Of a stretch of 64,000 nt of DNA, positions 24,472-47,800 are shown one piece after another. Numbering within the stretch: position 1 is the stretch's first letter; every line of letters begins with the position of its first letter. This DNA is from Macrostomum lignano (taxonomy: Eukaryota): contig NIVC01001011.1 of NCBI GenBank assembly GCA_002269645.1, positions 62,001 through 126,000 on the forward strand, given 5' to 3'. The position numbers and the translations under genes were made by a program. Below the pieces are notes generated by a model. The model worked only from the letters and a program-made list of their open reading frames with translations. It did no database searches and was not told where the DNA came from.

Positions 24472-27397
<2,926 letters not shown>

Positions 27398-28012: not shown

Positions 28013-28644
28013 GACAGCTGTGACAGCTGCTGGAAGCTGGCTGCAAAGAACCGCCGCCTGTAAGTGAGCGCATACAGATAGTGTAACAATATAATCCCCA
28101 TTAATTTTCATATCTTTCTATGCACGTAATTTCATTTTCCAGGAAAGATTGTCTAGGCTTAAATAAAGATTTTAAAATAATGAGCTTGTCTTCTGCAGTG
28201 TACGGAGGTTCTCTCGTAAATTCTGATACAGCTGTATGGAAATAACATGTCCGAATGTACATCTCATATGTACATTTGCAAGTAAACTATACATTATACA
28301 TTCACAGTACGTCAGTACATAATTTAAATCCTTTTAAATGGAGTTTTGCTCAATATTTTTTCTGATCTACTAAATTAACTTCCATCCATTGTGCAAAAGA
28401 ATTATTGATATTCTCTGGAAAAAATAATGTTATGAATAAAACTACATCAATCAAATTTTGAGCCCCAGTTGTTTGGAGTTGGGAATCGAAGTAAAATGTT
28501 TATTCTATTTTTCATTTTTGTTCAAAATTTAAATCGTTGTTTGTTTTGTACTTTTTATGGTTGATTTTCTTGCAGTTTTACTTCTAGTAGAGTAGTACGA
28601 AAAAAGACGATTAAACCAAAATTTCATTTCCTCCTCTCTGCAGC

Positions 28645-28716
28645 CAGCCAATCAAACGCAAGATCGTTGCTAACGCAGTTGCTAAGACTTTTATCAGCTC
28701 GTGTTTAGTATATAAA
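28645..28716 (+). promoter_or_regulatory. H2A promoter: CCAAT box and TATA box
   Basis: CAGCCAATC at 28645-28653 and TATATAAA at 28709-28716, about 85 nt upstream of the ATG. Confidence 0.7.
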
Positions 28717-28798
28717 GCTGAGAGATCCGTTCGAAAAGCATTATCACGCTCTCAACACTAATTCTCTAAGTTTTACATCTATCTTATCCGAATTCATC

Positions 28799-29179
28799 AT
28801 GTCTGGACGTGGCAAAGGAGGCAAGGCCCGCAGCAAGGCCAAGACTCGCTCGTCTCGCGCTGGTCTGCAGTTCCCGGTCGGCCGTATCCACCGTCTGCTC
28901 CGCAAGGGCAACTACGCCGAGCGCGTGGGTGCTGGCGCCCCAGTGTACCTGGCCGCCGTGCTGGAGTACCTGGCCGCTGAGGTCCTTGAGCTGGCTGGCA
29001 ACGCCGCCCGCGACAACAAGAAGACGCGTATCATCCCGCGTCATCTTCAGCTGGCCATCCGCAACGACGAGGAGCTGAACAAGCTGCTGAGCGGCGTCAC
29101 CATCGCTCAGGGCGGCGTGCTGCCGAACATCCAGGCCGTGCTGCTGCCCAAGAAGACCAAGGTCCCCGGCAAGGCCTAA
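28799..29179 (+). CDS. H2A: Canonical (replication-type) histone H2A, intronless, 126 aa
   Basis: SGRGKGGK...[102 protein letters not shown], followed by a 3' stem-loop. Confidence 0.98.
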
Positions 29180-29287
29180 GCTAAAGCTTAGCACCCGCTC
29201 GGTTCGATCTGCTATTTTAGCAATCGTTTCCCAGACTGCATTTATGACACTTCACTGCATTGTGGGTGTCTTGAATAATTGAACGTT

Positions 29288-29312
29288 AAAACGGCCCTTT
29301 TCAGGGCCACCA
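29288..29312 (+). terminator. Histone mRNA 3' stem-loop (SLBP site)
   Basis: AAAAC GGCCCT TTTC AGGGCC ACCA: a perfect 6-bp stem with 4-nt loop, matching the established metazoan consensus. Confidence 0.95.
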
Positions 29313-29894
29313 AATTTGTTTGATGTTGCAAGTCTTGCCTTGTCATAAATTTACTACGAGTACTAGTAGCAGTTAGTCCAGACTCCAGAGTCCAGGTTAG
29401 GCTTAGTTTATCATGTTAATGTGCTTTTTAGACTGGGCCAGTGCATGGTATGAATGTAAAAATTCTGTTTTGGATCCTCAAACATTTAACGTTAGGCCTA
29501 GCCTAGCCCTAGCCCTAGTCTTGGTTTTTCACCAAGGCGAAATCGCATCCAAAGTCCAATTTGAGAATGCGATTTTAAGTCAGGACTCGGCATGCTTAGC
29601 ATAGCTGCCATACCGCGTACCGCCCATGCCATAGCGATATCAATATAGCATAGCATGCCTATCTACATCTACATCCCACTTAAAGTAAACCTAGCTAGGT
29701 TTCTCCCGAGTCCCTAAAACTGAGTTAATGCTGTATTCTGTGTGTTCTGTATAGCTTGAGATTATCAGCACAGCACCCTTAAAGCCTCTCCTTTTGATTC
29801 CCTGTGCTACCCTACCCTATTAGCAATGGCATCTGAGAAAAACGATCCACCAAAACGCCAAGGCACGAGACGATTTCCTAAACTTTTCTAATTC

Positions 29895-31370
29895 AAAACG
29901 GCCCTTTTTAGGCCACTGTTCACTGATTGTCCGGTTAATGGCACTACAAAAAAATTTTCGTGCTTACTTAAGCAGTCAAGTTATCATACAGAAGTTACAG
30001 ATAGTATTAGAAGAGAATATTGTTAGCTGATGTTTAGGTGTAATAATCAATTAAAAAAGCCAGTCTATTTTGTACCTACTGGTGAATTAAAGTGCATATA
30101 TTTTGAAGCTAAAATCACTCCGGCACAAGAAGCTGATTTGATCTTCGTGTTGACCTACAACAAAACCCTACTTAATTAGGAATTTACTAAATATCTGATA
30201 GATATGTAATAATATGTAGCAACTCCCGACCCTCACCCGTAAAAAACTGAAGCCATTAGGCCGTAGAGCCATAAATTCTCTACAGGAAATTCTCTCTCAT
30301 CTTGGCTTGTCAGGCTTGCCCAGGGTTGCTGTAGTTTGTTCTCTCATCGAAATATGTCTTGACGTCAGTAAGGACAAGGAGGGTGGGCCCCTGATTCGCC
30401 CGCCCAGCTTTTCCCGCCGAAATTTGTCCGCAGTGTAATTTTCCCGCGAGCGAATTGCCCGCGCCCCGCAATGTTTTTTTCCTGCAGGCATTTTGTCTGC
30501 ATTGCCCCCCCACCCCAATGCTTAGTACAGCGTAAGTCTTAATAAAGAGATTGGGAAGGGGACAAAGCGACACGGCATATGCATGAATTAATAGCTCACT
30601 GATTTACCCATGCATGTACTCGGATATATGCAGGTAGAACTGAATTATGACATGACTCTCAATGACTTCAAGAAAAATATACATTTGATATGCAGTTACT
30701 AACAAAGCTTTTGATCAGGTAAATCTCTTTATTAAGATTTACTAAAATTTAGGGGGGGGGGGGGCAATGCAGACGAAATCTGCCGAGTGGATAAATGCGC
30801 TGCAGGAAAAACCTCGGCAGGCAGTTGTAGGACAGAAACATTTAAAATATAGGTTGGACGCATTTCATTTTCCTACCGATTCTGGTTCTGGAACCAATCT
30901 TCGTGAAAAGCCTCACCATCTAAAAAAATCTGTTATGGCACCGGTTTAAAATTATAGACTGTTGTTTTGAAACATGTTTTTAAAACGGCCCTTTAAGGGG
31001 CTGCTTTTTTCTGCGTGACGGTTAAAATTGATAATACTGCTTGTAAAATCATTCCCCCCCCCCAAGTCTTGGCTATCTCGATGGATTTTCATTGGGCGTA
31101 ATCTGTAGTAAGGAATCTGGATTCAAAATACGTCAGCAGCAGTGCCGCATTGGCTTTTTGAAATTGTACGTATATCCACACTATTTTTAAATATAATTCT
31201 AATGTTGTGCACTTTTATTTTATTTATTATTTATGTTATGCATTTTGAAATCACTGAGCAATAGCTACATGTATCTGTATGGTATAAAAGTTTCGAATGA
31301 TTAAGTTTTTAAAGATGTGCGAATCCCCAAAACCTATTATAGGCATAAAACGGCCCTTTTTAGGGCTACT
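29895..31370 (+). other. Three additional degenerate histone stem-loops downstream of H2A
   Basis: AAAAC GGCCCTTTTTAGGCC AC (29900-29914); AAAAC GGCCCTTTAAGGGGC (30987-31001); AAAAC GGCCCT TTTT AGGGCT AC (31352-31367). Confidence 0.75.
30394..30822. mobile_element. Degenerate relative of the foldback element at 35988-36695
   Basis: 30394-30552 matches the reverse complement of the right half of that element (CCCGCAATG...CCTGCAG...ATTTTGTCTGCATTGCC...AATAAAGAGATT). 30675-30822 matches its centre and right arm in forward orientation. Confidence 0.7.
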
Positions 31371-33328
31371 TGAAACAACGGTTTTAGAGGGCTTGTTGGC
31401 CAAAAAGCTGCTAAAGAAGAATATTGAAAAAAGTAGAGATTTGTCCCTCGTCTTCTAATGCCAAATGATGCCGATTTATCGAGACTAGAGTGCAAAAAAG
31501 TAAAAAAGCAAATATTTTCATACGTGTAGTTTTGTAAACTATAGTTTTATTAACAAAGTTTCTTCATCAATGACAATCGATGTCCTGCGAAACGCAAGAT
31601 CTATACCGCCTGCAGTTAAAATTTTGAATGCTTCTTATCTCATTTATCTGTAACAACAATAACTGTGTATAATTTGTTTGCTATTTGTTTGTAGGAATCC
31701 TTCTAAATAAAATGGAAACAAAATTTTACATTTACAATCTTGTCTACTGGCAGTGGCAGAACAAGAATATTGCAATAAAAACTGTAGGGCCAACATACAG
31801 CTCTCAATAGCCAGATTGGGTAGGCGGCAAAGCATCGACAAGAGGCCGATTGCAAGCCAGCTGGCCCGAGAGACTATATTATTACATTGGCCGGATTGCT
31901 GTAGCGAAAACACTCAATTCTGTATGCCGGCATATAAAACAAGAAATTCGAGGCAGAGTTACCAATATCGAATTCAGCCAGACTCCTATCGCAGATTAAG
32001 GCTTAGCAAGCAATATTAGCCAGCTAGCAAGCTGGCACTGCAACATTCATCTGGCTGAGATTCCCCGGGCTAGCACCCAAGGAGTCGAGTTGGCAAAGCT
32101 TCAATTTATTTAACGCGCAGGTGCAAGCTCGCCATTGAAACCACCTGCTTCTAACTGGAGGGTTAGGGTTAAAGAATGACCAGCTAATCGATAGATAATA
32201 AACAATTAACTGGCCATTACAGTCGACTCACTGACAGGGCCGCTAGCCGGGCTACAATTAGGCGCAAACTCTGCCGCGGACACTCACTGCATGAACTGAC
32301 AGTGAGGCTCTCGTTTCTGCCGCTGGTTTCGTGTTTTCGCAGTTAATTTTTTTTTCAACCATACAGCCTACCAGACTTTTTATTGGGCTGGAGGGTAGTG
32401 GGGGTGAGTAGAAAGATAAGAGCTTAGCGCTTGTACATGCGCCGACTGTGGGGGGGGGCGAGAGTGAACCGTATAAACCAACTTAATCGATTAAATTGAC
32501 TGCAAGTAAAATTCACTGCTGCCTTCTTAGCCAATCAGGGAAAGAAGCACTTTTGAAGCCGTCTTATCAAAATTAAACTTAAATAATAAAAAAGATTATC
32601 ATCAACTTTCTGACTTTTTTACTGCAAGTAGCGTATGCCAAAAAGGAAATACCAACGAGTTCGTATGAAAAATAACATTTTTTGGATATATTTATCCAAT
32701 ACATTGCATATTGCAATTATTAAGATGCGCCCAAGGCCCAACACTTGCTTGGGCACATTCGCATGCTTGGGAAATTTATTTATTTCGTCGTTAAACATTA
32801 AGGATTAAATGCACGTGTCGTAAACACATTAATATACTTAACACCTGGAAATTCATTAGGAAAATAAACATAAAACAGAGTCATACTGACAAAAATATAA
32901 ATGAGAGAGTTGCATTTAATAAAACAATGAAAACTTAAAACAGTGACAAGTTAGTGAAAATGCGAGCAAAATAAATAGTTTAAAAGCTAGTTTAATTTTG
33001 TTCTGTTTACTCATTATAACAAAAATAAGTAGTATAGAAGAGTAGCTTCAATTAAAAAGACAGGCATTATTGTCAGACCGTAATAGAAAACAGACAAGCA
33101 CCGATTATCAAATCAAAAGAGCATTGCATTAACGCACCTTGCTACTACGCTCGTATAAGTAGGCGCAAAAATGAAAGCGTATGACTAAAGCTGTAGAATA
33201 AGGTAATTTAACCCCGAAATTTGACACGTCGAACAAGTTGAATAGCACAAAAATCGACATAAAAATACGGTGGATATTTTTTATATACAAAAACAGACTG
33301 AATTACACACCAGACCATAAGCTCACAA

Positions 33329-36300
33329 TTAGCAGCGTTTCACATCCGCGCACAGCTGCAGCACGCTGTGCCGCAGGCCGTCTTCCAGACTGTCGGCGAA
33401 TATCTGGCACAGCCGGTCGCAGGTGTCGGCCACCATAGCGGCAGTAGATTCGGGACCGTCAGAAGCGGCAGCGGCAGCAGCGGATGCGGCCTTCATCTGG
33501 CTGGCAGCTGACTGCAGCTCATCGCGCAGGCTGCTCAGCTTGGTGTCGCGCAGGCTCATCAGGAATTCACAGTTCTCGGCCCGGTACTTGCACTCGTAGT
33601 ACCTGGGTTGGAGTGGACATATTTAATAGATGCTGGCTTTTTATGTGAGGCCTGTAGTGACATGCTCACTTATTGGCAGAGATGACAGCTGAAATGACAT
33701 ATAGACACACAGACAGACAGACACTAACTTGGCACACACAGACACTCATTTGGCAACCACAGACACCCACTTGGCAGACACACAGACACTCATTTGGCAG
33801 CCACACACAGACACTCACTTGGCAGACACACACAGACACTCTTTTGGTAGACACACACAGACACTCTTTTGGTAGACACACACAGACACTCACTTGGCAG
33901 ACACACACACAGACACTCTTTTGGTAGACACACACAGACACTCACTTGGCAGACACACACAGACACTCTTTTGGTAGACACACACAGACACTCTTTTGGT
34001 AGACACACACAGACACTCACTTGGCAGACACACACACAGACACTCTTTTGGTAGACACACACAGACACTCACTTGGCAGACACACACAGACACTCTTTTG
34101 GTAGACACACACAGACACTCACTTGGCAGACACACACAGACACTCTTTTGGTAGACACACACAGACACTCACTTGGCAGACACACACAGACACTCATTGG
34201 TAACCACAGACACCCACTTGGCAGACACACACAGACACTCATTGGTAACCAGAGACACCCACTTGGCAGACACACACAGACGCTCACTTGGCAGACACAC
34301 ACAGACACTCACTTGGTAGACACACACAGACACACACTTGGCAGACATACACAGACACTTGGCAGACACATACAAAGACACTTGGCAGACACATACAAAG
34401 ACACTTAGCAGACACAGACACACTTGGCAGACACACACAGAGACACTTGGCAGACACACACAGAGACACTTGGCAGACACACACAGACAGTCACTTGGCA
34501 GACACACACAGACGCTCACTTGGCAGACACACACACACACTTGGCAGACACACACAGACACTCACTTGGCAGACACACACACACTTGGCAGACACACACA
34601 GACACTTGGCAGACACACACAGACACTTGGCAGACACACACAGACACTTGGCAGACACACACAGACACTTGGCAGACACACACAGACACTTGGCAGACAC
34701 ACACAGACACTTGGCAGACACACACAGACACTCACTTGGCAGACACACACACACACTTGGCAGACACACACACACTTGGCAGACACAGACACACTTGGCA
34801 GACACACACAGACTTGGCAGACACACACACACTTGGCAGACACACACACACTTGGCAGACACAGACACTCACTTGGCAGCCAGGTCCTTGCACTGCGCCT
34901 CCCGCTGGGTGCACTCGGCCTCCAGCTCTCGCAGCCGGTCCTCAAAGGCGGCCCGCTCGGCCTTGGCCGCGGCCTGTGCCGAGTTCCGCTGCTCGGCTAC
35001 CTCCAGGCGGTCGAACTCGCTCTGCTCGAATCGCTCGCTGAGCTGGGCGAGCTCGTAGTTCAGGTACTCGATCTTGGAAGCACAGATGGTTGCAGTTAGG
35101 ATTTAGTTAGTTAGCTGGCATGTCAGGTAAAACTTGCAGATTGGATTAAAATACAGCCAAATAAGCATTTATCGAGAGCTGCCTTAATTCTAATTTGTTT
35201 AACGTCCGGAAATAATACATTTCCTAGTATATGCATCACTTTAAGATTGCTTTAGGATCCTAAATCGACATTCTTTGATCCCAATATTTAAAAATCGAAA
35301 TCCTATTTCCAACAATCCCAGATTCTCAGAACCCCGAATCCCGCTCCCAAAAATCCAAAAATCCAAAATCCCGCTCCCAGCAATCGCAGAATCCCGAATC
35401 CCGCTCCCAAAAATTCCAGAATCCCCAAATCCCGCTCTCAGCAATCCCAGAATCCAAAATCCCGCTTTCAGCAATCCCAGAATCCAAAATCCCGCTCTCA
35501 GCAATCCCAGAATCCAAAATCCCGCTTTCAGCAATCCCAGAATCCAAAATCCCGCTTTCAGCAATCCCAGAATCCCCAAATTTTCGCTCCAAAAATCTTA
35601 GAATCCCAAATCCCGCTCCCAAAAATCCCAGAATGCCAAATCCCGCTCCCAGCAATCGCAGAATCTCAAATCCCGCTCCCAAAAATCCCAGAATGCCAAA
35701 TCCCGCTCCCAGCAATCGCAGAATCCTAAATCCCGCTCCCAAAAATCCCAGAATGCCAAATCCCGCTCCCAGCAATCGCAGAATCCCAAATCCCGCTCCC
35801 AAAAATCCCAGAATGCCAAATCCCGCTCCCAGCAATCGCAGAATCCCAAATCCCGCTCCCAAAAATCCCAGAATGCCAAATCCCGCTCCCAGCAATCGCA
35901 GAATCCCAAATCCCGCTCCCAAAAATTCCAGAATCCCAAATCCCGCTCCCAAAATCCCAAAATCCCAAATCCCGCTCCCAAAATCTCGGGAGCACGAGAA
36001 ATGCCCGCAGATGAATTGCCCGCCGAGATTTGCCCGCAGGAGATTTGCCCGTGGAGATTTGCCCGCCGAGCTTTTCCCGCGGAGATTTGCCCGCAGTGCA
36101 TTTTGCCCGTGAGCGAATTGCCCGTGGAGATTTGCCCGGCGAGAATTGCCCGCCGAGATTTGCCCGCAGTGCAATTTTCCCGCGAGTGAATTGCCCGCGA
36201 GCGAATTGCCCGCCGAGTTTTTTCCCGCCGAGGTTTGCCTGCAATGCTTTTTTGCAGCGCATTTGGCAGCTAGATTCTGTCTACATTGCTCCCCCCAAAA

Positions 36301-38774
36301 TATGCATTTGATATGCAGTTACTATCAAAACGTTTTGATCGTGTAAATCTCTTTATTGAGATTAACACGTACAAAGCATTGGGAAGGCAATGCAGACAAA
36401 ATCTGACGCGTGGCTAAATGCGCTGCAGGAAAAAAGCATTGCGGGCAAACCTCGGCGGGAAAAAACTCGGCGGGCAATTCGCTCGCGGGCAATTCACTCG
36501 CGGGAAAATTGCACTGCGGGCAAATCTCAGCGGGCAATTCTCGGCGGGCAAATCTCCACGGGCAATTCGCTCACGGGCAAAATGCACCGCGGGCAAATCT
36601 CCGCGGGAAAAGCTCGGCGGGCAAATCTCCACGGGCAAATCTCCTGCGGGCAAATCTCGGCGGGCAATACGTCTGCGGGCAATTCTCATGGACCCCAAAA
36701 TCTCAGAATGCCAAATCCCACTCCTAGCAATCCCAGAATCTCAAATCCCGCTCCCAACAATCCCAGAATCCCAAATCCCCAGTAACAAACTTAGCTAGCC
36801 AAAAGCCAAGTCCATAGAAAGCGTGCCCTACCTGCAAAGCGTACTGCTCGCGTTCATCAGCCATAGTCTGTTGGACATCAACCCAGGCCAGGTCAGTCTG
36901 GCACTCAACCGAAGCAGTGGGAACCACAGATCGGACTCGAACATCCTCCGCCTGCTGCTGCTGTTGAAGTCTATCAACGGTGGCAGCCACGACAGCAGTC
37001 AGACGCTGTCGCTCGTCATTTAGCCGTTCAGCCTCCGCAGCCAGACAGTCTAGCAGAGGCCCAATAGCCGAGGCTTGCTTATCTAAATTGTCGATAGCTT
37101 TAACAATAGCAGCCGTTGTGTTAGCTGTAGAGTTGTTAACAGAACTATTGGCATTTCCTGTGCCGCTGTTAGCCCTACAAGCCGCTTTCACTAGGGCATT
37201 GACGTTGGCGCTAGTGGCCGAGCGAGACAGATGCGTTTGAATTGAGCTGGCTAATTCGGTTAGCAGAGTCGGGTAGCTGGCGCTGCGGCGTCTGTTGGCA
37301 CTGTCGCTACTTTGGGTCTGAGCTGGAGCTTGCGGCTGCTGCTGCTGTTGCGGCTCCGACGAGGTGTCGCAGCTAAGCGACGCATCTGGCTGCCGCGTGA
37401 CCTTTTTAGACGACTTTAAAATGGTTAATAAATACTTGTTACGTAAAAATTATATACATAATACTAGCAAATCATATGGCTAACTGATCTAAAATTATTA
37501 ACATCCCATTCATGTAAACTCTGTGGGTCTTAAGGGAGTAAGTAGGAAGGATCGACCAATAAGTAGTTTTGTGGTACTTAAAAGGGCCGTTTTAACAGGT
37601 TGTCGATCTGCAATCCTAGAAGATGGATGTGAGGGGTAGTGAAGAGCATAGTGAATTTTGCCTGTAGCAAACTAACCCTCGAATATCTTGATTACGTCAC
37701 CCCAAAAAGGGCCGTTTCAACCGGTACTGGTACTGGGTCTGGCACCAAGAAGAACGAAGGGTGCCACAAAGGGTAATACAAGAATGAGAGAGGTTAGATT
37801 AGCGGTAGGGGAGAAAAATGGCTGACATTAGGTAAATATTTTCATAGCAAACTAACCCGAAATGACATCAAAAAGTGTGGTCCTCAAAAGGGCCGTTTTT
37901 ACAGGTTGTCGGTTTGCAATCCCGGAGGATGGATGCGAGGGGCAGTGAGGAGCTTGGTGGATTTCGCCTATAGAAAACTAACCCTCCAATATTCTGATGA
38001 TGATGCTGGCCAAAAAGGACCGTTTCAACCGGTACTGGGTCTGGCACCAAGAACGAACGGTGTCACAAGGGTAATACATTAACGAGGGAGACCAGATTAG
38101 TGGGAAAAGGGAGAAGTGGTGACATTGGGTTAATATTTTCATAGCAAAATTACCCGAAATAAACTGCAATAGGGTGTAGCTGTAGCCCTCAAAAGGGCCG
38201 TTTTAACGTGTAAATTTAGTTCAAAAGTCAGATAATAGGTAATAGGTAAGGTAATTTCAAAATGCTGATAATAGTGGTAAGAAATGCGTCTACTGCAAAC
38301 CTTTTTCTTAGCCACAGACATTGCAGGAAACATATCGCCGTTGCAATTGCTACCATTATCGCAGCTACGTTGCATTAACGGTTGCCTCTGACGCGTCCCG
38401 TTGGCAATAGCAACAGCAGTAGAGCCAACAGCTGAGTTTTCATAATTTTGCACTTTTTTATCCAATAAAAAGTCGCGAAATCTAGCCAAATGCGGAGCTG
38501 TCGAGCCTTGCAATATTTGCAGCAGATCGGACACTGTAGCATCGTTATATACTGCAGGATTGCTGGAATTTGAGCTCAACTGCGGAGCTGGCAGGAATTG
38601 AGCGCTTGGACTTGCCGGCTGCGGTGGCTGCTGCTGCCGACGGCCCCGGCCAGCGGTTCTGGAACGGGCGCAGCTGGCCGCCAAACTGCCAGCTATGGCG
38701 AGGCCGCGGCGAACAGGCGGAGTGCCGTTACGCTCGGAGCGGCCAGACGGCGAGGGCGACGGGGATGATGACAG
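33329..38774 (-). CDS. Coiled-coil protein, 5'-incomplete (at least 509 aa). Exons 38774-38301, 37413-36832, 35072-34873, 33602-33329
   Basis: All junctions are phase-compatible: CCGCAG|CTG; AAG|GTTTGC..TTTAAAG|TCG; CAG|GTAGGG..CCAAG|ATC; AA|GTGAGT..CCAG|G. It has a disordered S/P/Q-rich N-part, a TASVECQTD LC8-type motif and heptad-rich IEYLNYELAQLSERFEQSEFDRLEVAEQRN...FEDRLRELEAECTQREAQCKDLAAKYYECKYRAEN. Confidence 0.7.
33690..34878 (-). repeat. ~20-27-bp minisatellite beginning exactly at the exon 3 donor
   Basis: Minus-strand units TGCCAA GTGAGT GTCTGTGTGTGTCT and variants. The first unit overlaps the exon end GCTGCCAA|GTGAGT at 34873/34872. Confidence 0.9.
35320..35987 (+). repeat. ~30-bp minisatellite (60-bp dimer), resuming at 36696-36780
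   Basis: Alternating CAGAAT(C/G)CCAAATCCCGCTCCCAAAAATCC and ...CCCAGCAATCG units. Confidence 0.9.
35988..36695. mobile_element. Non-autonomous Mutator/foldback-like DNA transposon (708 bp)
   Basis: About 300-bp inverted arms built from ~14-bp subrepeats (ATTTGCCCGCCGAG). Termini GGGAGCACGAGAAATGCCCGCAGA and, reverse-complemented, GGGTCCATGAGAATTGCCCGCAGA. Exact 9-bp direct repeat CAAAATCTC at 35979-35987 and 36696-36704. Confidence 0.8.
37570..38204 (-). other. Array of five histone-type stem-loops within a ~305-bp tandem duplication
   Basis: Minus strand: GGCCCT TTTG AGGGCT (38199-38184), GGTCCTTTTTGGCC (38021-38008), GGCCCT TTTG AGGACC (37894-37879), GGCCCT TTTT GGGGTG (37713-37698), GGCCCT TTTA AGTACC (37588-37573). 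Each is preceded by (A/G)AAAC. Confidence 0.8.
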
Positions 38775-38839
38775 CTGCGGAGTTGGGTGGAAGGGTTGGG
38801 GGGATTGTCTGATATTTATGTTATTTTGTCTGTAACTAC

Positions 38840-39360
38840 CAGCGTCTGTCTACCGGTGACTGTCTTTTGGTGTCTGTCTGTCAGTGACTGTCTCATGGTG
38901 TGTCTGTCAGTGTCTGCCAAGTGTGTCTGTCTACCAATGTGTCCGTCTGCCTGTGTGTCTGTCTGTCAGTGTTTCTGTCTGCCTGTGTGTCTGTCTGCCA
39001 GTGTGTCTGTCCGCCAGTGTGTCTGTCTGTCATTGTGTCTGTCTGCCAGTGTTTCTGTCTGCCAGTGTCTTTCTACCAGTGTGTCTGCCTGTCAATGTGC
39101 CTGTCTGCAGTGTGTCTGTCTACCAGTGTGTCTGTCTGCCTGTGTGTCTGTCTGCCAGTGTGTCTGTCTGTCAGTGTGTCTGTCTGCCAGTGTGTCTGTC
39201 TGTCAGTGTTTCTGTCTGCCAGTGTGTCTGTCTGTCAGTGTTTCTGTTTGCCAGTGTCTTTCTACCAGTGTGCCTGCCTGTCAATGTGTCTGTCTGCCAG
39301 TGTGTCTGTTTGCCGGTGTCTGTCTGGCAGTGTCTGTCTACCAGTGTGTTTGTCAGCTGT
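38840..39360 (+). repeat. Degenerate GTGTGTCTGTCTGCCA minisatellite
   Basis: Tandem ~16-18-bp TG/TC-rich units. Confidence 0.85.
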
Positions 39361-41714
39361 GTTGTCTATCTTCTGATGTAATAGACTCATAGCTGGCATA
39401 TGCTCACACACGTTGTACAGGTACAGACTTTCTCATTGTTAGTCTTGAATACACTATGATATAGTGGTAAGCTTTTCCTAGGCCTATGTGAATATACATC
39501 TTATGGAAAGTTTATGCATTTGGTATCAGTTTAATCAAGGGATCTTTTTGTTCTTACCCTATATTTATTTTAAAAAAGCATGTGAAAAGTCACTTACACT
39601 TTCCAATTCTTCAAATGTAGAAATATCACACATTACTAACAATTAGCACTTATAATTGTTGACAGAAATTAAAATATCAATGTCTTTGATGCAGAATTTC
39701 AATGCTGAAAAATATTAAAAAGTCTTTTCATTAGGATCTTCAAATGAAAAGTATTTTTATTAGATTATATTCTGGTTTATTGGCAAAAAAACAATGTATA
39801 AGTTGTTATTAAAATTCTATCAGTGTTTCCTTAGTAATTGGAATCCAACAAGCTTTTTTGTCAAATATTTATTTTAACAAGCCCAGTTCAAATAATGCTT
39901 CTTTATCTTTTACTTTTAAAATGAAAATGATATGAAAAAGACTAATGACACTTAGAAGGCACAAAGAACAAAATGTTCAGAAAGGATTATATATTATATA
40001 ATTTAATGTCTGACTAAATTATGACGTTAATCCAATAGTCCCAGCTATAGCAAGACCAAGACAAGCATGCCTACTAGTCTAATCTAAGTCTAGAAACTAG
40101 TCTAGAGACCAATTAAAGATTAAGGAGGAGAGAAGTTGCAAGGGCCTCAAATCTTAATTTAACATGCATTTACTCCTATCTTTGTTTGCCTTTTTCTTAA
40201 CTGTTAACAAGTTTTTGTTTAAGTGTGACTTCAAATTTTTAAAGAATTTATGCAAAGATAGTTCCAGGAATTAGAATTCAATGGTTTCAAAATCTGTATG
40301 TTTTAACAGCTTGTATATCTCTACTGGATTTGTATTTTGCATCTGATGAGTCATTTAAATCAGGGCTCTTATCTTCCATGCCAAATCATCTAGCAAATGG
40401 AATTATTCTCAAGCTATAGGTGAATAAACTATGAATTGTATCACACTATATTCATTTCACTTTTACTTCTAGACATTCATGAATCATGACTTATGTAGTA
40501 TGCTCACTAAACTGTATTAAAAGATTTACAAATTGCTTCACATGCTGCCACTAGATGGCATACTGATTAGCTATTATAAAAACACAAGTAATCTGCATGG
40601 TATACTAATTAGCTAATGAGACATTTAGCCTTAAAAATATGGTCATAGTTAATCTTGCCATTTATCCAAAAGTATGTTTATTTTGCTTTTCTATTTTATA
40701 GGTAAGTTGCATTTTTTATCACAAACTAAGTCACATGGTCAGTATAATTTCAGAGGTTGCACATGTATATGCAATAAGTTCCTAGGCAATCTAGTAACTA
40801 TATGTACAGTGTGTAGCAAGGAGAATTCTTTAGGCTTTTGAAAATCTATGATAGTTTTAAAATGATTATTTTATTATAATAATGACAAAAACAATGTTTT
40901 TAATACTAGAAGGTAATATATTATTTAGGTCACTATAATATATAAGCATTTTTGTGTTGTTTATCTGCTATCTCTTGTTGAAAAATTTGAATATTTCATT
41001 GGACATTCTTTCATAAAATTAGACTTAGAGCCTCTGTAGTTACCTTCTATGGTCTAACCCCCCAATCTATCAGTGTAGGCCTACACTCAGTGAATTTGAT
41101 CCAACCCTCCCACCACATGGAGTATACAAATAAAAATATATTGCATGCATCAGTGCATACTTGGGATTAGAAATATGGTTATAGTATAGTATTGATCAAA
41201 CACTTAGCCAATTATTGCCAAATACTACCATATGAACCATGGCATTGGCATTGGACAAAGATGATCATTGTACAAAGCCCATTTTGTGGATGGTAGGGTG
41301 TATGCCGGAAAATTCTAGCATATACTTGATTTCCGTGGCGTACACCAGAGTACATTTCTTGGCTGTGTACAGTGTGGCATACAGTGTGGTGTATAAAGAC
41401 TAGTGTAGAAATTAATATAAAAAATTTGTTGTGCTTTTTCTGTGTTAAGTTATTTCAAAAACCTTTTTTCTGCTACCATTTTCTCATTTACCAATCATTT
41501 TAATTACTGGAGTTGTCACAACAATTGTTATATTGTTATCAATTTTTTTAATTTGTAGTTTAAATTTAAAAATTTAAATATTTGTTAAATTTTTTACTGT
41601 TTTTTAAGTTGGTATACATTTAAAATCTGTTGGCATACAATTGAAAATTTAATAAAAATGTGTCCAGCATACACAGAAAACCTTCCACAATATGGCACAA
41701 AGCACTGTCATTGT

Positions 41715-42308
41715 CATGGGCAGTGGAAGCTTGCGGCACCAGAGGCATATGCCCCCCCCCCCGAGAAAATGAGTCCATATGTAATTTTTAATTTTTTAGT
41801 GCTTTTCTGATTTTAGGCCCTAATTAGGCCTAGCAGCTTATAGAGGTATATGTGCCCCCCTTGCTAGAGGTTGGACAGGATCCCAATCCCGATCCCAAAA
41901 TCTTGGGATCCCAAGGAAAATTGAATTCCCGCGGGACCAGAATCCCGACCATAAAAAAACTCGAGATTTGGGAACAGGTCTTTCGATTAATAATTTATAG
42001 AATTAGTGATTACTTGAAGGTATTTTGTTTCAACTTGTACTCGTTGCATTACTTACTTTGTTGGTTACAAAACTTCATATCAATTTCGTTGTGTTTTACT
42101 TCTTGATCTTGACAATCTTTTCTCAATTTTGCTTAACTTTACATGGACAATACACTAAAAGACCTGATCTTGATTCCCGATCCCGATCCCGAGAAAAAAA
42201 TTATTTCCGATCCCAATCCCGCCCAAAGATTTCAATCCCGTCCAACCTCTACCTCTTGCCCTATGCCCAGTACCCCCCCCCCTAATATATGAGGCTCCGT
42301 TGTCCCTG
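41715..42308. mobile_element. hAT-like MITE (outer element)
   Basis: Imperfect TIRs CATGGGCAGTGGAAGC / CAGGGACAACGGAGC. Flanking 8-mers GTCATTGT (41707-41714) and GACATTGT (42309-42316). Confidence 0.5.
41865..42251. mobile_element. hAT-like MITE nested in the previous element
   Basis: Perfect 12-bp TIR TAGAGGTTGGAC, internal ATCCCG subrepeats, and 8-bp flanks CCCCTTGC / CCTCTTGC. Confidence 0.7.
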
Positions 42309-44872
42309 GACATTGTCATAGAAAAAAATAGATAGGGGCCTAGGAATTTCAATGGCAAGAAATATATTTTGAGGGATAATCTAATATTTTATATGGTATC
42401 TGACATCTATGCAGTAGTGTGCATATTTCTATGCCCTTGGCTTAATATTATAAAAAATTCAATAGGCAAATTGATGAGTTTAAATAGACAGATTATCAAA
42501 TGTCAACTAGTGCATAGAATAACTTATTTGATTTGGGTTAAGCAGGTCATTAACTACTAACTAGGCCTAATAATTAATACAATAGGCCAGTATTAAGTGA
42601 GTAACATAATTGCAAACTAATAGTCAAGAGACTATGCTAACAAAAAAAATCTTTCAAGACATACCATTTTGTGCTTATTAAAATAGGAAATTCACAAACG
42701 TACAGTACATGTTGGTGGATTTGTGGGTGGTTGCACTGGTTAGTTCAGATCGAGAACCGAGATCTAACAGACGAACGCTACAGTAACATTTTCTTATTCC
42801 GACTAACTACTGTACTGAACTGAATTCACCGGCTGTTGGGTTCACCGGATTTTTAACTTTATTTTTAAGGGTTGGAAATATATATAATCGATAGCGCAAG
42901 TAAAACTAGAGATGCGCCTTGATTTTTGGCTCTGCGCGTTGCCCCTGGACATCAGGAGGGCGATTTTTGTTATTTTTTAGGGGGGGTGAAACCTACGGTG
43001 AACCCAATAAATCCTTCCAGAGAGCTGAAAACCTGTCATGCAATATTTCAAAGCAAAATATAGGCAAATTTCGACGTGCGCATATAATTTCAGCGTTGCG
43101 CGTTGCTCCTGAACTGCAGGAGAACGTTTTTTGTTGTTTTTTCTAGTTGTTGAAGAACGTGCCGGCATTTGAAATTTTGCCTATTTATAAACAAATCATC
43201 TAACACAAATATGCAGAATAATTTTAGTCTTAATTAAAAAGGCTTTTAAAATCAAAATTAAAACATTATTAATAATTAAATCGTAAATTGTTCCACGACA
43301 ATCAAATTTGGAACAAACTTAAATTCCGTTGGAGCTTGATGTTTTAAACATTCTAATTTGAAGTACATGATTGATCATTACCTTTCCTCACAGAAAAGCA
43401 CAAAACTCTAAGGATTAATAAAAAAGCAGTTGTTAAATTCTGAAAGAATTGGAGAGGCAATAAGAAGTAAAAAAGAGGTATAAAAGATTAAAGTAGACTC
43501 TTGCTCCTCTTTTCTTGCAAATTAAACTATAACAAAAGAACTGCTGTAGGACGAAAGTATAGGGTTTAGCAGCTCTGTAACATTTCAGAAAATGCTGTCA
43601 GAAATTTCTTTGTAAAATTTGTACTAACCAAATTTGATAAAGTACAGTAAACGGTTGTGTGCAACACAACAACAACAAAAACAAAAAAAAATACATTGTC
43701 AGCCAGGCAAGCGTAGGAAAATGTCATAGGGCGCGTTTTAAGGACTGGGCGCGAACGTATAGGCCGCACCGCCGGCGCGGTGCACCTGCTTCAGCCAGCT
43801 ATGAAGCAAGGCTGTCAAGAGGTCGACGAAATGCCCGGCGAAGCATGCAGCACCTCCTGCTGCACTGGCTGTGGGCAGTGCGACTCGGCTCACATAAAAT
43901 CGCCTGCCAGCTAGAGTCACCGACGGCGCACAACAGTTTGCTGGGATGGCAACAGGCCGGTGCGGTGATCGCGTATATATGCGTTTATATATACAATCTT
44001 TGACTAAAATAAAAGCTACATACACGATTTTAGTTTCTTATTGCTATTATTTATAGTTGAAAAATGTACGAAAAACTGCAATTTTTGATCATTTAGAACG
44101 CTTAAACACTATTTGTAGCTGTGCTGTGGCGCTCTCTAAAATTAGTTTTATTATTGACAAACGCTCATGCAATTGCGGATTTAAGGGGAAAGAGGCCACA
44201 CTGTCTTACTTTATACATTTTTGCATCTTTAAAAACGACGTACCAATAACTACGTACCAATAACTACAAACTTGTGCAATAAAGACATAGAGAAGTTTTT
44301 ACTCGTAATATAGCTCGTAATAAGACAGTACATATGGTACACACGGGACTTCTGATAAAAAAGAATCACAAAGACAAGTGCAAAGTATAGGTATATTTTT
44401 CCAATCCAAGTTTAATGTGAATTTGACAGGTGATTATATCGAACACTTATATAGTTTGACAACTCTCAATAACAATACGAGCGCATTTCGAGAGTTTACT
44501 ATAGATGTCCCTTCTACGTGCATGCAGCGACGTCCATTGAGACGTAGAAGAAGCGTAGGCGGACATTGAAATTTTCCACGGAAAGTGAAACAGACTGGAC
44601 AAAGTGTACATAAGCAACATTTTTCGATAGATAGTATGCGCAGGTAGTAAGATAGTTAGTATAGGAAAAGACATTGTTAGCCATATCTAAGTTTTATTAT
44701 GTACATATTAAGCCTCCTTTGAAACGTTTTAATAGTACACTTCATTTGATTGGCTATCCTTGATCTGACAACATGCCATATTTTTGCTATATAGTTATTC
44801 TCAAGTCTTTTGATCGTCAGGCTATCATGCCTTACATGTACATGTAGCTTCAGTACCGAAAACTCGTATTAT

Positions 44873-47800
44873 TCACTCCACTAGAATCATCATTCGAATG
44901 CTTTTTAGCGACACAAAAGCATTATCAATGGCATACCAAGTAATGTACTTGTGATGACGAATCTCGCCGCTAACAAACAGTCCATTAGGATTGGTGTAGA
45001 AGCAGCTCTTGAACCACCATCCCGACGCGCTGGCGTAGTTAATCGAGCAGGAAAATGAACTAGCCTGATCGTTATCGCGGTCCATAGTGGAGAACATCAT
45101 GCCTCGGCTCCTCTCGGCCAGCCCGTCGGTGGCGATGTTAGACCTCTCGGTGGCGTAGCGGCTGTAGCTCAGCAGGTAGTTGGTCGACGAGTTGCCCACC
45201 TGAAAGCCGTCGTACTCGCAGTGGAACTGAGAGCCGTCCCATTTGGTCAGTTCAAAGCGTACGGTTGCTCCGGCGCCGTTGTTGCCCGTGTCGCCATATG
45301 TGGTGAGTCGGTGCAGCTGTTTGAGTCCTGCATTGTAATATTAAGGATTATCATATTGCATGTACTCGGGAAAAGACTGAGTGAGAGTGACAGCTTGATG
45401 AGTAAAGAGCGCCGTGTCTCTTGGTTGGCGCCGCTGTTTCTTGGTAGGCGCTCCGTCTCTTGGTGGGCGCCCCTGTCTCTTGGTTGGCGCCGCTGTTTCT
45501 TGGTAGGCATCCTGTCTCTTGGTTGGCGCCCCTGTCTCTTGGTGGGCGCCCCTGTCTCTTGGTTGGCGCCCCTGTCTCTTGGTTGGCGCCCCTGTCTCTT
45601 GGTTGGCGCCCCTGTCTCTTGGTGGGCGCCCCTGTCTCTTGGTGGGCGCCCCTGTCTCTTGGTGGGCGCCCCTGTCTCTTGGTGGGCACCCTTGTCTCTT
45701 GGTGGGCGCCCCTGTCTCTTGGTGGGCGCCTCTGTCTCTTGGTGGGCGCCCCTGTCTCTTGGTGGGCACCCTTGTCTCTTGGTGGGCGCCCCTGTCTCTT
45801 GGTGGGCGCCCCTGTCTCTTGGTGGGCCCCCTGTCTCTTGGTTGGCGCCGCTGTTTCTTGGTAGGCATCCTGTCTCTTGGTAGGCGCTCCGTCTCTTGGT
45901 GGGCGCCCCCTGTCTCTTGGTGGGCACCCTAACCCCTGGTTTCTAGGCCGGTGCATGCCACGACCGAGAGATAGCAAAAGTAAGATAGCAAAAGAGATAG
46001 CCCTCACACCCATGAGCGGCGATCCCCAAGACAGCAGAGAGTGTACATGTCTGACGATAGCAAACCTGGGTGAGCGTGTGTATGAGTGCTTGGCGGTGTA
46101 CAGTATCTGCGGAATGGGAATGCCTCACCGATGGGTTGACTGTTACCATGCTTGAAGGGGGGGGGGGGTTCACAAACTCGAAATTTCACAACGTCGGAAG
46201 CACCTTCTTTCACAAGATCGAAATTTTACAAGGTCGAAATTTCAGAACATCGAAAACTCAAATAGCAGCCTCTTTTACAAGGTCGAAACTTCACAAGGTC
46301 GAAATTTCACAACATTTCGACCTTATGAAGTCCTTATGACGACCTTATGAAGGCATACAAGCGCGCGGATACGTACGCAGGCACACACTCACACAGTAGT
46401 GTACAGCGGCCCTAACTTTATTTTATCGTTAGGCACGTTAGGCATGTACACTTCACTGCGCCTTGGGGGGTTGGCTCTCAAGGCCGTTAATTGCACGAGC
46501 AGAGCCAAGCCGAGATTCCAAATTCAGCCCCAAATTAATGTGACTGCACTTGGAATCGAGCCTGGGTCGCTGGCACACCAGAGCAGCTGCGCTAACGCTG
46601 GGCTACGGCCCCCGTACACAAATGATGCGGCACAAGGAAGCTGGGTTTAGCTAAAAAGTGACGAAAGTTGGGCTTGGGATAAGTGAGAACAAGCAAGTGG
46701 ATAATTAGAAATATTTTATAAACTTAAGCTCAAAAGTGGAGTCCCTAATTATCTCCTTGCTTATTCTTAATTATCCCAAGACCAACTTTCGTCACATTTT
46801 TAGCTAAACCCAGCTTCCTTGAGTCACTGTGAGCAGAATGACGTATCATGTGTGTACATAGGTTACTCGGGCTCCACTTTATGAGCTTAAGTTGACAGGC
46901 CCTTTTTAAGGCCTCAAAGCGTCCATTCTCAGTGGTAGAGTTGAAGCCCGTATGGTAAAAATTTCTGTGACAGAGTAAATTTGACCGATTCACCACCTAT
47001 AGAAGCTCAAAATTTCTTTGCTTGCAAAGCTTTCACTTTTCTGAAACTCATAGCTATCGCTGCCAGATGGAATAGCAAATACCAGCAAAATATATGAGGC
47101 ATCGGGTAAACAGAACAACCTTGAGTTGCTATCGACGACGGAAAACGCTTTTAAGAAATCCGACTAATTCTCAGAATTCTACGATCAAAGGAGATTTAGA
47201 TCTACAAGCTAGCGTCTGTCGGGACCTCATGCCAATCTTTGATGGAGGGGTTATTTGATGCACTGCATTTCTTTACCTAAATTATCAGATGGTTATGGCT
47301 AGTGCAGCTTCTTTTTTAATCTTCAACTTCACAGGGAAAAAGCCACTTTTGAAACTTGATTTCCCGCCGTTTCTAGAAAATAAAATCGTAAACGTTGAAT
47401 TACGTTATATATTTTTATCCCGTCAATATTTCGAATTGTTGATTATATAATTACTCGTTTAATACTCGTCAAAATTCAATTAAAACGAGTACCGATTCCA
47501 AAGAAGTGCATGGTAACGGGGGCTTTGAGCACAATTGCAAATTAGACCACAGACGATTTGCTGTCAGCGAGGAGGCAAAGCAGTCGTGCCCATTGTCGGC
47601 TGATTTTCCATGCAGGAATGATATATTCCTGCACGGTCACGAGTGCGGGAATGACATCTGCACGAGTGCGCGCTAGCGCACGAGTGCACGATGTCCTTGA
47701 CGCACGAGTGAACGTGAAGGAATTCCATTGTCGGATGATTCATCGTGCAGGAATGCACAAAACCGAGCAGGAATGCATTTCTGCGCCTAACGCTTTTTCA

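What the first reader, a model, noticed from the sequence alone, without database searches (positions are those of the whole stretch)
37570..38204. Tandem array of five histone-type 3' stem-loops in the sense strand of a non-histone gene's intron
Seen: five (A/G)AAAC-GG(C/T)CCT-TTTN-stem elements on the minus strand, the strand of the coiled-coil gene, inside its predicted 38300-37414 intron. They are organised as a ~305-bp duplicated unit carrying two loops, plus a fifth loop (spacings 305 and 306 bp). The 5' flank and 5' arm are conserved while 3' arms vary. Four loops share GGGT(T/A)A(G/T)TTT(G/T)CTA about 25-30 nt downstream. The best copy (38199-38184) is near-canonical and shares ACGTTAAAACGGCCCTTTT with the H2A loop. 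No minus-strand histone ORF is visible upstream. Established: this structure binds SLBP and, with U7 snRNP, directs non-polyadenylated 3' ends, and is essentially confined to histone mRNAs in animals. Inference: the array may be an S-phase/SLBP-dependent attenuator or isoform switch. Unspliced read-through stays in frame to a stop at 38139, so cleavage at the first loop gives a nonstop RNA, while cleavage at later loops gives a short isoform lacking the coiled coil. It could instead be an SLBP decoy or debris from a lost histone cluster.
Basis: partly seen in the sequence, partly recalled or inferred. Interest (0 to 1): 0.85.

Follow-up and report, generated by a model that had tools for sequence, protein, structure and literature searches.

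The report
Decaying histone stem-loop repeats in intron
An intron of an uncharacterised flatworm (Macrostomum lignano) gene carries a small tandem repeat whose units each begin with a copy of the histone-mRNA 3' stem-loop; it is most likely a slowly decaying duplication product from the histone H2A gene next door, not a proven regulatory switch, though some short parts of it are oddly well preserved.

Summary
Five AAAC-GG(C/T)CCTTTT elements lie on the minus strand at 37573-38204, inside an annotated intron (37414-38300) of Macrostomum lignano gene BOX15_Mlig012855g2. They form 2.1 copies of a ~305-bp unit built from two related monomers, A and B.

In this window only A1 forms a full stem (one G.U pair; Rfam Histone3 26.5 bits, against 30-34 for working M. 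lignano histone loops). A2 and A3 have one and two mismatches. B1 and B2 are not recognised.

The array is not isolated. A solitary H2A gene 8.4 kb away is followed by three more orphan loops, and every histone gene or pseudogene in three other M. lignano loci is trailed by such orphans.

A homeologous locus (~88% non-coding identity) has the same five-element array in the same intron and orientation. There A1 and A2 are perfect canonical loops, so the ancestral copies were intact. The monomers have diverged 16-22%, which is at or above background.

Best reading: a locally amplified, decaying copy of a histone 3'-end module.

Unexplained: the 5' half of the loop and a second box, GGGTTAGTTTGCTA, are much better conserved than the 3' arm. 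A working SLBP-dependent attenuator is not excluded but is unsupported.

The parts
37570..38215 (-). Tandem array: 2.1 copies of a ~305-bp higher-order unit in the order A1-B1-A2-B2-A3. Each monomer starts with a histone stem-loop-like element.
   Evidence: Self-blastn gives 77.5% identity over 343 nt. The direct-repeat family has spacings of 125, 181, 127 and 178.
38184..38199 (-). A1: GGCCCTTTTGAGGGCT, a 6-bp stem with a closing G.U pair, 5' flank AAAAC and 3' flank ACA.
   Evidence: Rfam Histone3 26.5 bits (gathering score 34). Folding energy -9.1 kcal/mol. The homeologue L005 has the perfect GGCCCTTTTGAGGGCC.
38006..38021 (-). B1: GGTCCTTTTTGGCCAG, a degenerate loop that forms only a 4-bp hairpin.
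   Evidence: No Rfam match. Folding energy -4.2 kcal/mol. The L005 counterpart is destroyed in both halves.
37879..37894 (-). A2: GGCCCTTTTGAGGACC, with 5 of 6 stem pairs (one C x A mismatch).
   Evidence: Rfam 16.1 bits. Folding energy -4.3 kcal/mol. L005 has the perfect GGCCCTTTTAAGGGCC, scoring 28.6 bits.
37698..37713 (-). B2: GGCCCTTTTTGGGGTG, degenerate, with a 3-nt deletion relative to the homeologue.
   Evidence: No Rfam match. L005 has GGCCCTTTTTGGGCC, a perfect 5-bp stem with a 5-nt loop at -11.2 kcal/mol.
37573..37588 (-). A3: GGCCCTTTTAAGTACC, with 4 of 6 stem pairs. This is the last element; the array ends just after it.
   Evidence: Rfam 12.9 bits. Folding energy -0.5 kcal/mol. 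Alignment.
38142..38155 (-). Box 2 of A1: GGGTAATTTTGCTA.
37971..37984 (-). Box 2 of B1: GGGTTAGTTTTCTA.
37845..37858 (-). Box 2 of A2: GGGTTAGTTTGCTA.
   Evidence: Across 8 monomers this block has a mean pairwise identity of 0.93, against an overall mean of 0.61.
37665..37678 (-). Box 2 of B2: GGGTTAGTTTGCTA.
37414..38300 (-). Intron of host gene BOX15_Mlig012855g2 that contains the array (donor AAG|GTTTGC, acceptor TTTAAAG|TCG).
   Evidence: Annotated protein P0001 and the older model P0002 both join ...SVAKKK to SSKKVTRQ....
33329..39633 (-). Host gene BOX15_Mlig012855g2: a 521-aa protein with no Pfam domain and a coiled-coil-like C-terminal half.
   Evidence: L004 is 100% identical to window 49633..23329, with the gene at L004 10001-16305. 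Pfam gives only sub-threshold hits.
28799..29179 (+). Solitary replication-type histone H2A gene, convergent with the host gene and not present in the gene calls for this contig.
   Evidence: ORF; tblastn 100%. It is absent from the gene table of L004.
29293..29308 (+). SL1: the canonical H2A stem-loop GGCCCTTTTCAGGGCC, followed by ACCA.
   Evidence: Rfam Histone3 32.7 bits. Folding energy -11.4 kcal/mol.
29900..29914 (+). SL2: orphan loop GGCCCTTTTTAGGCC, with a 1-nt deletion in the 3' arm, 607 nt after SL1.
   Evidence: The same deletion is present in the homeologue.
30987..31002 (+). SL3: orphan loop GGCCCTTTAAGGGGCT.
   Evidence: A syntenic copy is present in L005.
31352..31367 (+). SL4: orphan loop GGCCCTTTTTAGGGCT, a 6-bp stem with one G.U pair.
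   Evidence: Rfam 20.8 bits. The L005 copy is perfect at 29.0 bits.

Best explanation
The array is a locally amplified, slowly decaying relic of a histone-gene 3'-end module.

Inferred history: a segment carrying a canonical histone stem-loop, its A-rich 5' flank and about 100-150 nt of downstream sequence was copied into this intron, most plausibly from the neighbouring histone H2A region. It duplicated into an A+B dimer, and the dimer duplicated again to give A1-B1-A2-B2-A3.

Shown: this happened before the two M. lignano homeologous loci diverged. The copies have since drifted. In this window four of the five loops have lost stem pairs.

The array belongs to a wider population of orphan stem-loops that trail histone genes and pseudogenes in this genome. 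It is transcribed passively as intron RNA and removed by splicing, with no demonstrated effect on the host gene.
For: 1. **Only the loop core is shared with histone genes.** The rest of the 305-bp unit matches nothing else in the window or in three other histone loci.
2. **Orphan loops are common next to histone genes.** Three follow the H2A gene in this window. One or two follow each of H2A, H3, H2B and a frameshifted H2B pseudogene in L001-L003. All are in the orientation of the gene.
3. **The homeologue shows the ancestral state.** L005/L006 have the same five-element array at the same place in the same intron. Their A1, A2 and SL4 are perfect 24-nt matches to the working loop, so the ancestor was canonical and the window copies are derived decay.
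4. **No overall constraint.** Monomers differ 16-22% between homeologues, against 11.5% for all aligned non-coding DNA and 9% for the 3' part of the same intron. Derived changes are spread over both lineages. One copy (B1 in L005) is wrecked in both halves.
5. **Scores fall short.** Window copies score 26.5, 16.1 and 12.9 bits, with no match for B1 or B2, against 30-34.4 for working loops.
6. **The intron is spliced in the annotation.** All three annotated gene models and one older model splice it out.
7. **The read-through frame is not conserved.** It stops after 10 codons in L005 and after 54 in the window.
Against: 1. **Uneven conservation.** The 14-nt 5' half (AAAACGGCCCTTTT) of orphan loops changes far less than the 3' half. 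Window against L005: 5 of 112 sites against 21 of 80, with 11.5% background. L001 against L003: 0 of 84 against 3 of 60, with 4.5% background. A reciprocal search found no orphan that keeps only the 3' half. Plain neutral decay does not predict this.
2. **Two conserved boxes.** Within the array only the 5' half (0.91) and GGGTTAGTTTGCTA (0.93) stand out, against a mean of 0.61.
3. **Two loops survive in both homeologues.** A1 and SL4 remain foldable 6-bp loops in both, differing only by a pair-preserving C to U change.
4. **The source is not shown.** Homology of the monomers to the H2A flank beyond the loop core is not significant.
5. **No histone coding remnant survives near the array**.
Confidence: 0.6

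Rival explanations
1. Working SLBP/U7-dependent element. In S phase, SLBP binds the intact loops in the unspliced pre-mRNA and promotes cleavage. This would attenuate the full-length mRNA or produce a short, non-polyadenylated isoform that lacks the coiled coil.
For: - The loops are in the sense strand of a real intron, with A1 only ~97 nt after the 5' splice site. That spacing resembles the stop-to-loop distance of histone genes, 70-110 nt.
- The array is retained in both homeologues.
- In L005/L006, A1 and A2 are perfect loops (27.6 and 28.6 bits). A stop codon lies 10 codons into the intron, which gives a histone-like 3' UTR geometry.
- A1 keeps a 6-bp stem in both homeologues.
Against: - No motif like the GATGT-type sequence found 10-13 nt after the stems of the working histone genes is conserved after the array loops.
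- The 3' flank is ACA, not ACCA.
- In the window, four of five stems are damaged and cleavage at A1 would give a non-stop RNA.
- The read-through frame is not conserved.
- The monomers evolve at or above background.
- No annotated short isoform was found.
- In human cells SLBP CLIP found no non-histone targets (PMC4604434). Wild-type SLBP affinity needs the whole stem-loop plus flanking A residues (PMC10388802).
Confidence: 0.09
2. A conserved two-box element that does not depend on the histone stem. The 5' half of the loop (TAAAACGGCCCTTTT), together with GGGTTAGTTTGCTA in the array, would be kept by selection as a sequence-specific binding site on DNA or RNA. Possible roles are a landing pad or decoy for SLBP or another histone-locus factor, or a termination or pause element downstream of histone genes. 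The intron array would be a cluster of such sites.
For: - The 5' half is strongly and repeatedly better conserved than the 3' half in two independent locus families.
- The two boxes are the only conserved blocks across 8 monomers.
- All orphans near histone genes point in the direction of transcription, and a second loop lies 370-720 nt after every intact histone gene sampled.
- Window-type and L001-type H2A loci share nothing downstream of the gene except these loop cores.
Against: - The statistics are modest once clustering of changes is allowed for: P = 0.063 for the 5' halves, and the P = 0.0035 figure comes only from dropping B1 after the fact.
- One copy (B1 in L005) lost the 5' half.
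- Box 2 is absent from L001-type histone loci, and near H2A it appears only as a 3-4-mismatch match.
- The appealing Box 1:Box 2 helix has no covariation, -2.7 kcal/mol consensus energy, and a duplex energy no better than shuffled sequence.
- No binding factor is known.
Confidence: 0.17
3. Part of a mobile or dispersed repeat family. For example, a non-autonomous element carrying a short internal tandem array, which picked up or mimics a histone stem-loop and inserted into the intron.
For: - Short arrays of 2-5 monomers of 125-180 bp inside genes are typical of arrays carried by transposable elements in other invertebrates (PMC7492417).
- The M. lignano window is full of other repeats.
- The array has sharp edges.
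Against: - No terminal inverted repeats or target-site duplication.
- No tRNA-like part.
- No second copy in ~130 kb of M. lignano sequence apart from the syntenic homeologue.
- The insertion predates the homeologue split.
- A protein-space search with a translated monomer found only an unrelated metagenome satellite.
Confidence: 0.1

Closest known systems
Histone 3' UTR stem-loop (Rfam RF00032), the SLBP-binding element of replication-dependent histone mRNAs
   Same: - The 5' flank, 5' arm and U-rich loop are identical to the working M. lignano loops (TAAAACGGCCCTTTT).
- A1 keeps a 6-bp stem and a 4-nt loop.
- The homeologous copies of A1 and A2 are perfect matches through ...AGGGCCAC.
   Different: - It is not in a histone 3' UTR, and no histone ORF lies upstream.
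- The 3' flank is ACA, not ACCA.
- There is no conserved downstream element.
- Scores are below the Rfam gathering score and below the working loops of the same genome.
- Four of the five window copies have broken stems.
Orphan or pseudogene-associated histone stem-loops (relics of histone gene duplication)
   Same: - The frameshifted H2B pseudogene in L001-L003 carries a loop with the same G.U change and the same score (26.2 bits) as A1.
- Orphan loops lie within a few kb of histone genes and in their orientation.
- A human SLBP CLIP study found one non-histone genomic interval matching the loop. It was not expressed in HeLa cells by RT-PCR (PMC4604434).
   Different: - Here the relic has been amplified into a higher-order tandem repeat.
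- It lies inside the sense strand of an intron of an expressed non-histone gene.
- Its 5' half is unusually well preserved.
Minisatellite or higher-order tandem repeat
   Same: - Head-to-tail units of ~305 bp, each made of two diverged monomers.
- Fast evolution with indels.
- Some monomers resemble non-orthologous monomers of the homeologue more than their own counterpart. This fits either exchange within the array or uneven decay.
   Different: - There are only 2.1 units.
- The monomer is seeded by a recognisable RNA-processing signal.
- Two short boxes are far more conserved than the rest.
Cryptic downstream processing signals of histone genes, such as the poly(A) signals after Drosophila histone genes that are used when SLBP is missing (recalled from the literature, not tested here)
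   Same: Additional 3'-end-type signals sit a few hundred nt downstream of the normal histone processing site, in the same orientation.
   Different: Those are poly(A) signals with shown use. Here the extra signals are degenerate stem-loops with no evidence of use, and the array lies in another gene.

Membership tests
Histone 3' stem-loop (RF00032) | 6-bp stem (GGYYYU/ARRRCC) closing a 4-nt U-rich loop | tested here: inconclusive
   A1 has 6 of 6 pairs with one G.U. A2 has 5 of 6 and A3 has 4 of 6. B1 and B2 are out of register. In the homeologue, A1 and A2 have 6 of 6 and B2 has a 5-bp stem with a 5-nt loop.
Histone 3' stem-loop (RF00032) | A-rich 5' flank and ACC(C)A 3' flank | tested here: inconclusive
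   The 5' flank (A/G)AAAC is present in all five copies. The 3' flank is ACA in the A copies and unrelated in the B copies, whereas working loops have ACCA(A/C).
Histone 3' stem-loop (RF00032) | Score at or above the Rfam gathering score (34 bits) | tested here: not met
   Scores are 26.5, 16.1 and 12.9 bits, with no match for B1 or B2. Working M. lignano loops themselves score only 30.3-34.4.
Histone 3' stem-loop (RF00032) | Location 30-110 nt after the stop codon of a replication-dependent histone gene | tested here: not met
   No histone coding similarity lies on the minus strand near the array in either homeologue (tblastn). The array lies in an intron of a non-histone gene.
Histone 3' stem-loop (RF00032) | Histone downstream element able to pair with U7 snRNA about 10-15 nt after the cleavage site | tested here: inconclusive
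   The working genes share a GATGT-like motif 10-13 nt after the stem. Only window A2 has it, and the homeologue does not. The M. lignano U7 sequence is unknown, and there is no U7 match in the window.
Histone 3' stem-loop (RF00032) | Binds SLBP and directs non-polyadenylated 3' ends | not testable with these tools
   This needs EMSA or CLIP and 3'-end sequencing.
Tandem repeat / minisatellite | Head-to-tail copies of one unit | tested here: met
   2.1 copies of ~305 bp at 77.5% identity. The A and B monomers are homologous (z = 7-10 for their 3' flanks). Tandem Repeats Finder did not report the array at period ~305.
Transposable element | Terminal repeats or target-site duplication, and multiple dispersed copies | tested here: inconclusive
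   No terminal inverted repeats. No other copy in ~130 kb sampled. A whole-genome scan is not possible with these tools.
Histone-cluster spacer | The same sequence between genes of histone clusters | tested here: not met
   The 305-bp unit matches the H2A-H3-H2B clusters L001-L003 only over the 20-40-nt loop core.

The most novel reading that the evidence does not exclude
The orphan stem-loops of M. lignano, including this intron array, are kept in working order. In this reading their conserved 5' half (the part carrying the flanking A residues and loop U residues that SLBP needs), with or without Box 2, recruits SLBP or another histone-locus factor. In the host gene's pre-mRNA this would couple expression or isoform choice of a non-histone gene to S phase. 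That would be the first histone-type 3'-end signal used by a non-histone animal gene.
Probability: 0.1. Interest if true: 0.8.

Novelty: new variant of a known kind. Interest (0 to 1): 0.4.

Why it matters
Histone stem-loops are regarded as exclusive to histone mRNAs, so a sense-strand array in a non-histone intron deserved a check. The check shows a likely relic. It also shows that this flatworm genome scatters stem-loop copies around its histone genes, and that these copies keep their 5' half far better than their 3' arm. If that asymmetry holds genome-wide, it points to a constraint on the loop sequence that does not depend on the stem. That would bear on how histone 3'-end factors or histone-locus factors recognise their targets. 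If it does not hold, the locus is simply a neat example of a processing signal seeding a minisatellite.

Tried and rejected
1. **Homeologue search through the neighbouring PIP5K gene.** It returned no M. lignano proteins. The homeologues were found through cluster members of the host protein instead.
2. **Search for an intron-retaining short isoform.** The query was the N-terminal exon plus the read-through peptide and gave no hits at all.
3. **Test for dispersal in protein space.** A translated monomer gave two weak hits. The better one, followed to its DNA (L007), is an unrelated metagenome satellite with no loop motif.
4. **Box 1:Box 2 long-range helix.** It is the RNAalifold consensus, but with -2.7 kcal/mol, no covariation, and a duplex energy within the shuffled range. 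Rejected as unsupported.
5. **Derivation of the monomers from the H2A 3' flank or from SL2-SL4 beyond the loop core.** Local alignments are not better than shuffles. A Box 2-like match 60-80 nt after the H2A loop has 3-4 mismatches, so it is only a weak lead.
6. **U7 snRNA-like reading of the monomers.** There is no Rfam U7 match, no Sm-site-plus-hairpin arrangement, and the spacing is wrong.
7. **tRNA-derived SINE.** No tRNA was found.
8. **Retrocopies of histone mRNA 3' ends.** Rejected because 5'-truncated retrocopies would keep the 3' half, which is the opposite of what is seen.
9. **Two extra 'GAACGGCCCTTTT' hits in L005 (3928, 4297).** They lie in direct repeats flanking a degenerate tRNA-Ser-like sequence and are probably unrelated to histone loops.
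Full report
**Where the window comes from**

The H2A protein of the window is identical to H2A proteins on three contigs of assembly GCA_002269645.1. The host-gene protein matches [quoted passage not shown] at 99%. The locus fetched for that protein (L004, NIVC01001011.1) is 100% identical to window 49633..23329. The window is therefore M. lignano contig NIVC01001011.1, about positions 62001-126000.

**Checking the observation**

- AAACGGYCCTTTT (up to 1 mismatch) occurs nine times in the window against 0.09 expected.
- Five copies are on the minus strand at 38203, 38025, 37898, 37717 and 37592. Four are on the plus strand at 29289, 29896, 30983 and 31348.
- The five minus-strand copies sit in 2.1 copies of a ~305-bp unit at 77.5% identity. 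Each unit is made of an A and a B monomer that are homologous over ~115 nt.
- The stated spacings, the shared downstream motif GGGT(T/A)A(G/T)TTT(G/T)CTA, the 19-nt identity of A1 with the H2A loop and the read-through stop at 38139-38141 are all correct.
- The intron is real in the annotation. P0001, its two paralogues and an older model all join ...SVAKKK to SSKKVTRQ..., which corresponds to 38301|37413.
- No histone coding similarity exists near the array.

**How good the loops are**

Rfam Histone3 finds nothing at its gathering score of 34 bits. In E-value mode the scores are:

| Element | Bits |
|---|---|
| H2A loop (window) | 32.7 |
| A1 | 26.5 |
| A2 | 16.1 |
| A3 | 12.9 |
| B1, B2 | no match |
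| Working loops of H2A, H3, H2B in other M. lignano loci | 30.3-34.4 |
| Loop of a frameshifted H2B pseudogene | 26.2 |

Stems: A1 has 6 of 6 pairs with a closing G.U. A2 has 5 of 6 and A3 has 4 of 6. B1 and B2 form only short off-register hairpins. "Five histone-type loops" is therefore generous for this copy of the locus.

**Context: orphan loops are a habit of this genome**

- The window holds one histone gene, a solitary H2A at 28799-29179 (+), convergent with the host gene.
- Its canonical loop (SL1) is followed on the same strand by three orphans: SL2 at +607 nt, SL3 at +1694 and SL4 at +2059.
- In the H2A-H3-H2B clusters L001-L003, each intact gene has a canonical loop plus a second, degenerate one 370-720 nt further on. 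The H2B pseudogene is followed by three. All are in the gene's orientation.
- Outside 29-38 kb the window has no copy.
- The 305-bp unit itself matches these loci only over the 20-40-nt loop core.

**The homeologue**

Cluster members of the host protein led to two further loci, L005 and L006. They are 98.9% identical to each other and about 86-88% identical to the window in non-coding DNA. They have the same gene order: host gene, convergent H2A, PIP5K.

- The same A1-B1-A2-B2-A3 array lies in the same intron and orientation, and SL2-SL4 are syntenic.
- In L005, A1 (GGCCCTTTTGAGGGCC ACA), A2 (GGCCCTTTTAAGGGCC ACA) and SL4 are perfect 24-nt matches to the working loop. They score 27.6, 28.6 and 29.0 bits.
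- B2 is a perfect 5-bp hairpin. B1 is wrecked in both halves. A3 has a change in the 5' arm.
- The array therefore predates the homeologue split, and its ancestral loops were canonical. The window copy has simply decayed further.

**Is it under constraint?**

As a whole, no.
- The monomers differ by 16-22% (substitutions only). All aligned non-coding DNA differs by 11.5%, and the 3' part of the same intron by 9.4%.
- Polarised changes are spread over both lineages: 25 and 33 in the window units, 33 and 15 in the L005 units.
- The unspliced reading frame is not conserved. L005 stops after VCSIRISYY, whereas the window runs through A1.

Two features do not fit plain neutral decay.
- **The 5' half outlasts the 3' half.** For the eight orphans compared between homeologues, the 14-nt 5' half differs at 5 of 112 sites (four of them in B1) and the 10-nt 3' half at 21 of 80. 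Resampling of real aligned non-coding windows gives P = 0.063 and P = 0.02. In L001 against L003 (4.5% background) the counts are 0 of 84 and 3 of 60.
- **This is not an artefact of how the copies were found.** A reciprocal search found 8 orphans in the window and 6 in L001 with an intact 5' half, and none with only an intact 3' half. A full-length 24-mer scan finds the same set.
- **Two conserved boxes.** Across eight A/B monomers only AAAACGGCCCTTTT (mean pairwise identity 0.91) and GGGTTAGTTTGCTA (0.93) stand out against a mean of 0.61.

The two boxes are complementary, and RNAalifold picks that helix. It has -2.7 kcal/mol, no covariation, and is no better than shuffled sequence, so I do not adopt it.

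For:
- Sense orientation in a real intron.
- A1 lies ~97 nt after the 5' splice site, a histone-like distance.
- The loops are perfect in the homeologue, where a stop codon lies 10 codons into the intron.

Against:
- The motif shared by working genes 10-13 nt after the stem (GATGT-like) is not conserved after the array loops.
- The 3' flank is ACA, not ACCA.
- The window copy would yield a non-stop RNA at A1.
- No short isoform is annotated or retrievable.
- In human cells SLBP CLIP found no non-histone targets (PMC4604434).
- Wild-type SLBP affinity needs the whole stem-loop with flanking A residues (PMC10388802).

I rate this reading at about 0.1.

**Mobile-element reading**

There are no terminal inverted repeats, no tRNA-like part and no further copies in about 130 kb sampled. 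A protein-space search led only to an unrelated metagenome satellite. The whole genome could not be scanned with the tools at hand, so this stays open at about 0.1.

**Verdict**

The most likely explanation (0.6) is a tandemly amplified, decaying copy of a histone 3'-end module. It is one of many orphan stem-loops around M. lignano histone genes and rides passively in an intron.

The better preservation of the loop's 5' half and of Box 2 is unexplained. It is the part most worth a genome-wide follow-up.

- Novelty: a new variant of a known kind.
- Interest: 0.4.

Noticed in passing
L001 10482-15720; L002 and L003 equivalents; window 29289-31367: Every intact histone gene sampled in M. lignano (H2A, H3, H2B) has its canonical stem-loop plus a second, degenerate copy 370-720 nt downstream on the same strand. 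For H3, the ~20-nt 5' flank is duplicated as well. The solitary H2A of the window has three such extras, all conserved in the homeologue.
   Followed up: partly
L001 7602-7927 (-); L002 7812-8137 (-); L003 7806-8131 (-): A frameshifted H2B pseudogene lies upstream of H2A. It is followed by a G.U-closed stem-loop (26.2 bits) and two further orphan loops. In L002 and L003 part of it is annotated as a 77-aa protein without a Pfam domain.
   Followed up: partly
L002 12859-17873 (-): A ~5-kb 23-bp satellite (TAAAGAGCCACCATGTCAAACAT) lies between H2A and H3. Its AAGAGCCACCA core resembles the 3' arm and flank of the general animal histone stem-loop. It is absent from L001 and L003 at this place.
   Followed up: no
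window 28799-29179 (+): The intact H2A gene has a TATA box (tatataaag at ~28711) and a canonical loop, but it is missing from the gene calls for this contig. In L005 and L006 the homeologous gene is called with an N-terminal extension (177-179 aa).
   Followed up: partly
L005 3880-4340 (+): Two ~80-nt direct repeats, each containing GACGAACGGCCCTTTTACGGGCT, flank a degenerate tRNA-Ser(GCT)-like sequence (...GGACTGCTAATCCA...GGGTTCGTATCCCATCCTCGTCGCCA). They lie in a 4.2-kb stretch absent from the window. This is probably a tRNA-derived repeat whose 5' end mimics the loop motif by chance. ARAGORN calls no tRNA.
   Followed up: partly
window 36002-36252 and 36441-36687; also 30380-30470 and 30760-30820: Inverted arrays of a 14/73-bp repeat (GCGGGCAAATCTC...) flank a central segment in the next intron of the host gene. 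A related long inverted repeat with G/C homopolymer runs lies between SL2 and SL3 (30474-30795, picked up as a spurious MIR7533 hairpin). These are probably MITE-like elements.
   Followed up: no
window 26222-27000, 33670-34870, 38844-39354: Long (GTCT)n-type and 16-bp microsatellite arrays (TGTCTGCCAGTGTGTC) fill the introns and flanks of the host gene and PIP5K. They produce long spurious 'CLSV/CQVSV' ORFs.
   Followed up: no
window 38006-38021 and L005 11954-11968 (array B monomers): Window monomer B1 resembles L005 monomer B2 more than it resembles its positional counterpart L005 B1. This suggests either exchange between repeat units after the homeologue split or very uneven decay.
   Followed up: partly
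window 12300-12442; L001 1957-2099: A 143-bp stretch of the window matches, at 82%, a site inside the TPR-repeat gene upstream of the histone clusters. A weak tRNA-like Rfam hit lies next to it in L003 (3288-3357). It may be a dispersed short repeat.
   Followed up: no
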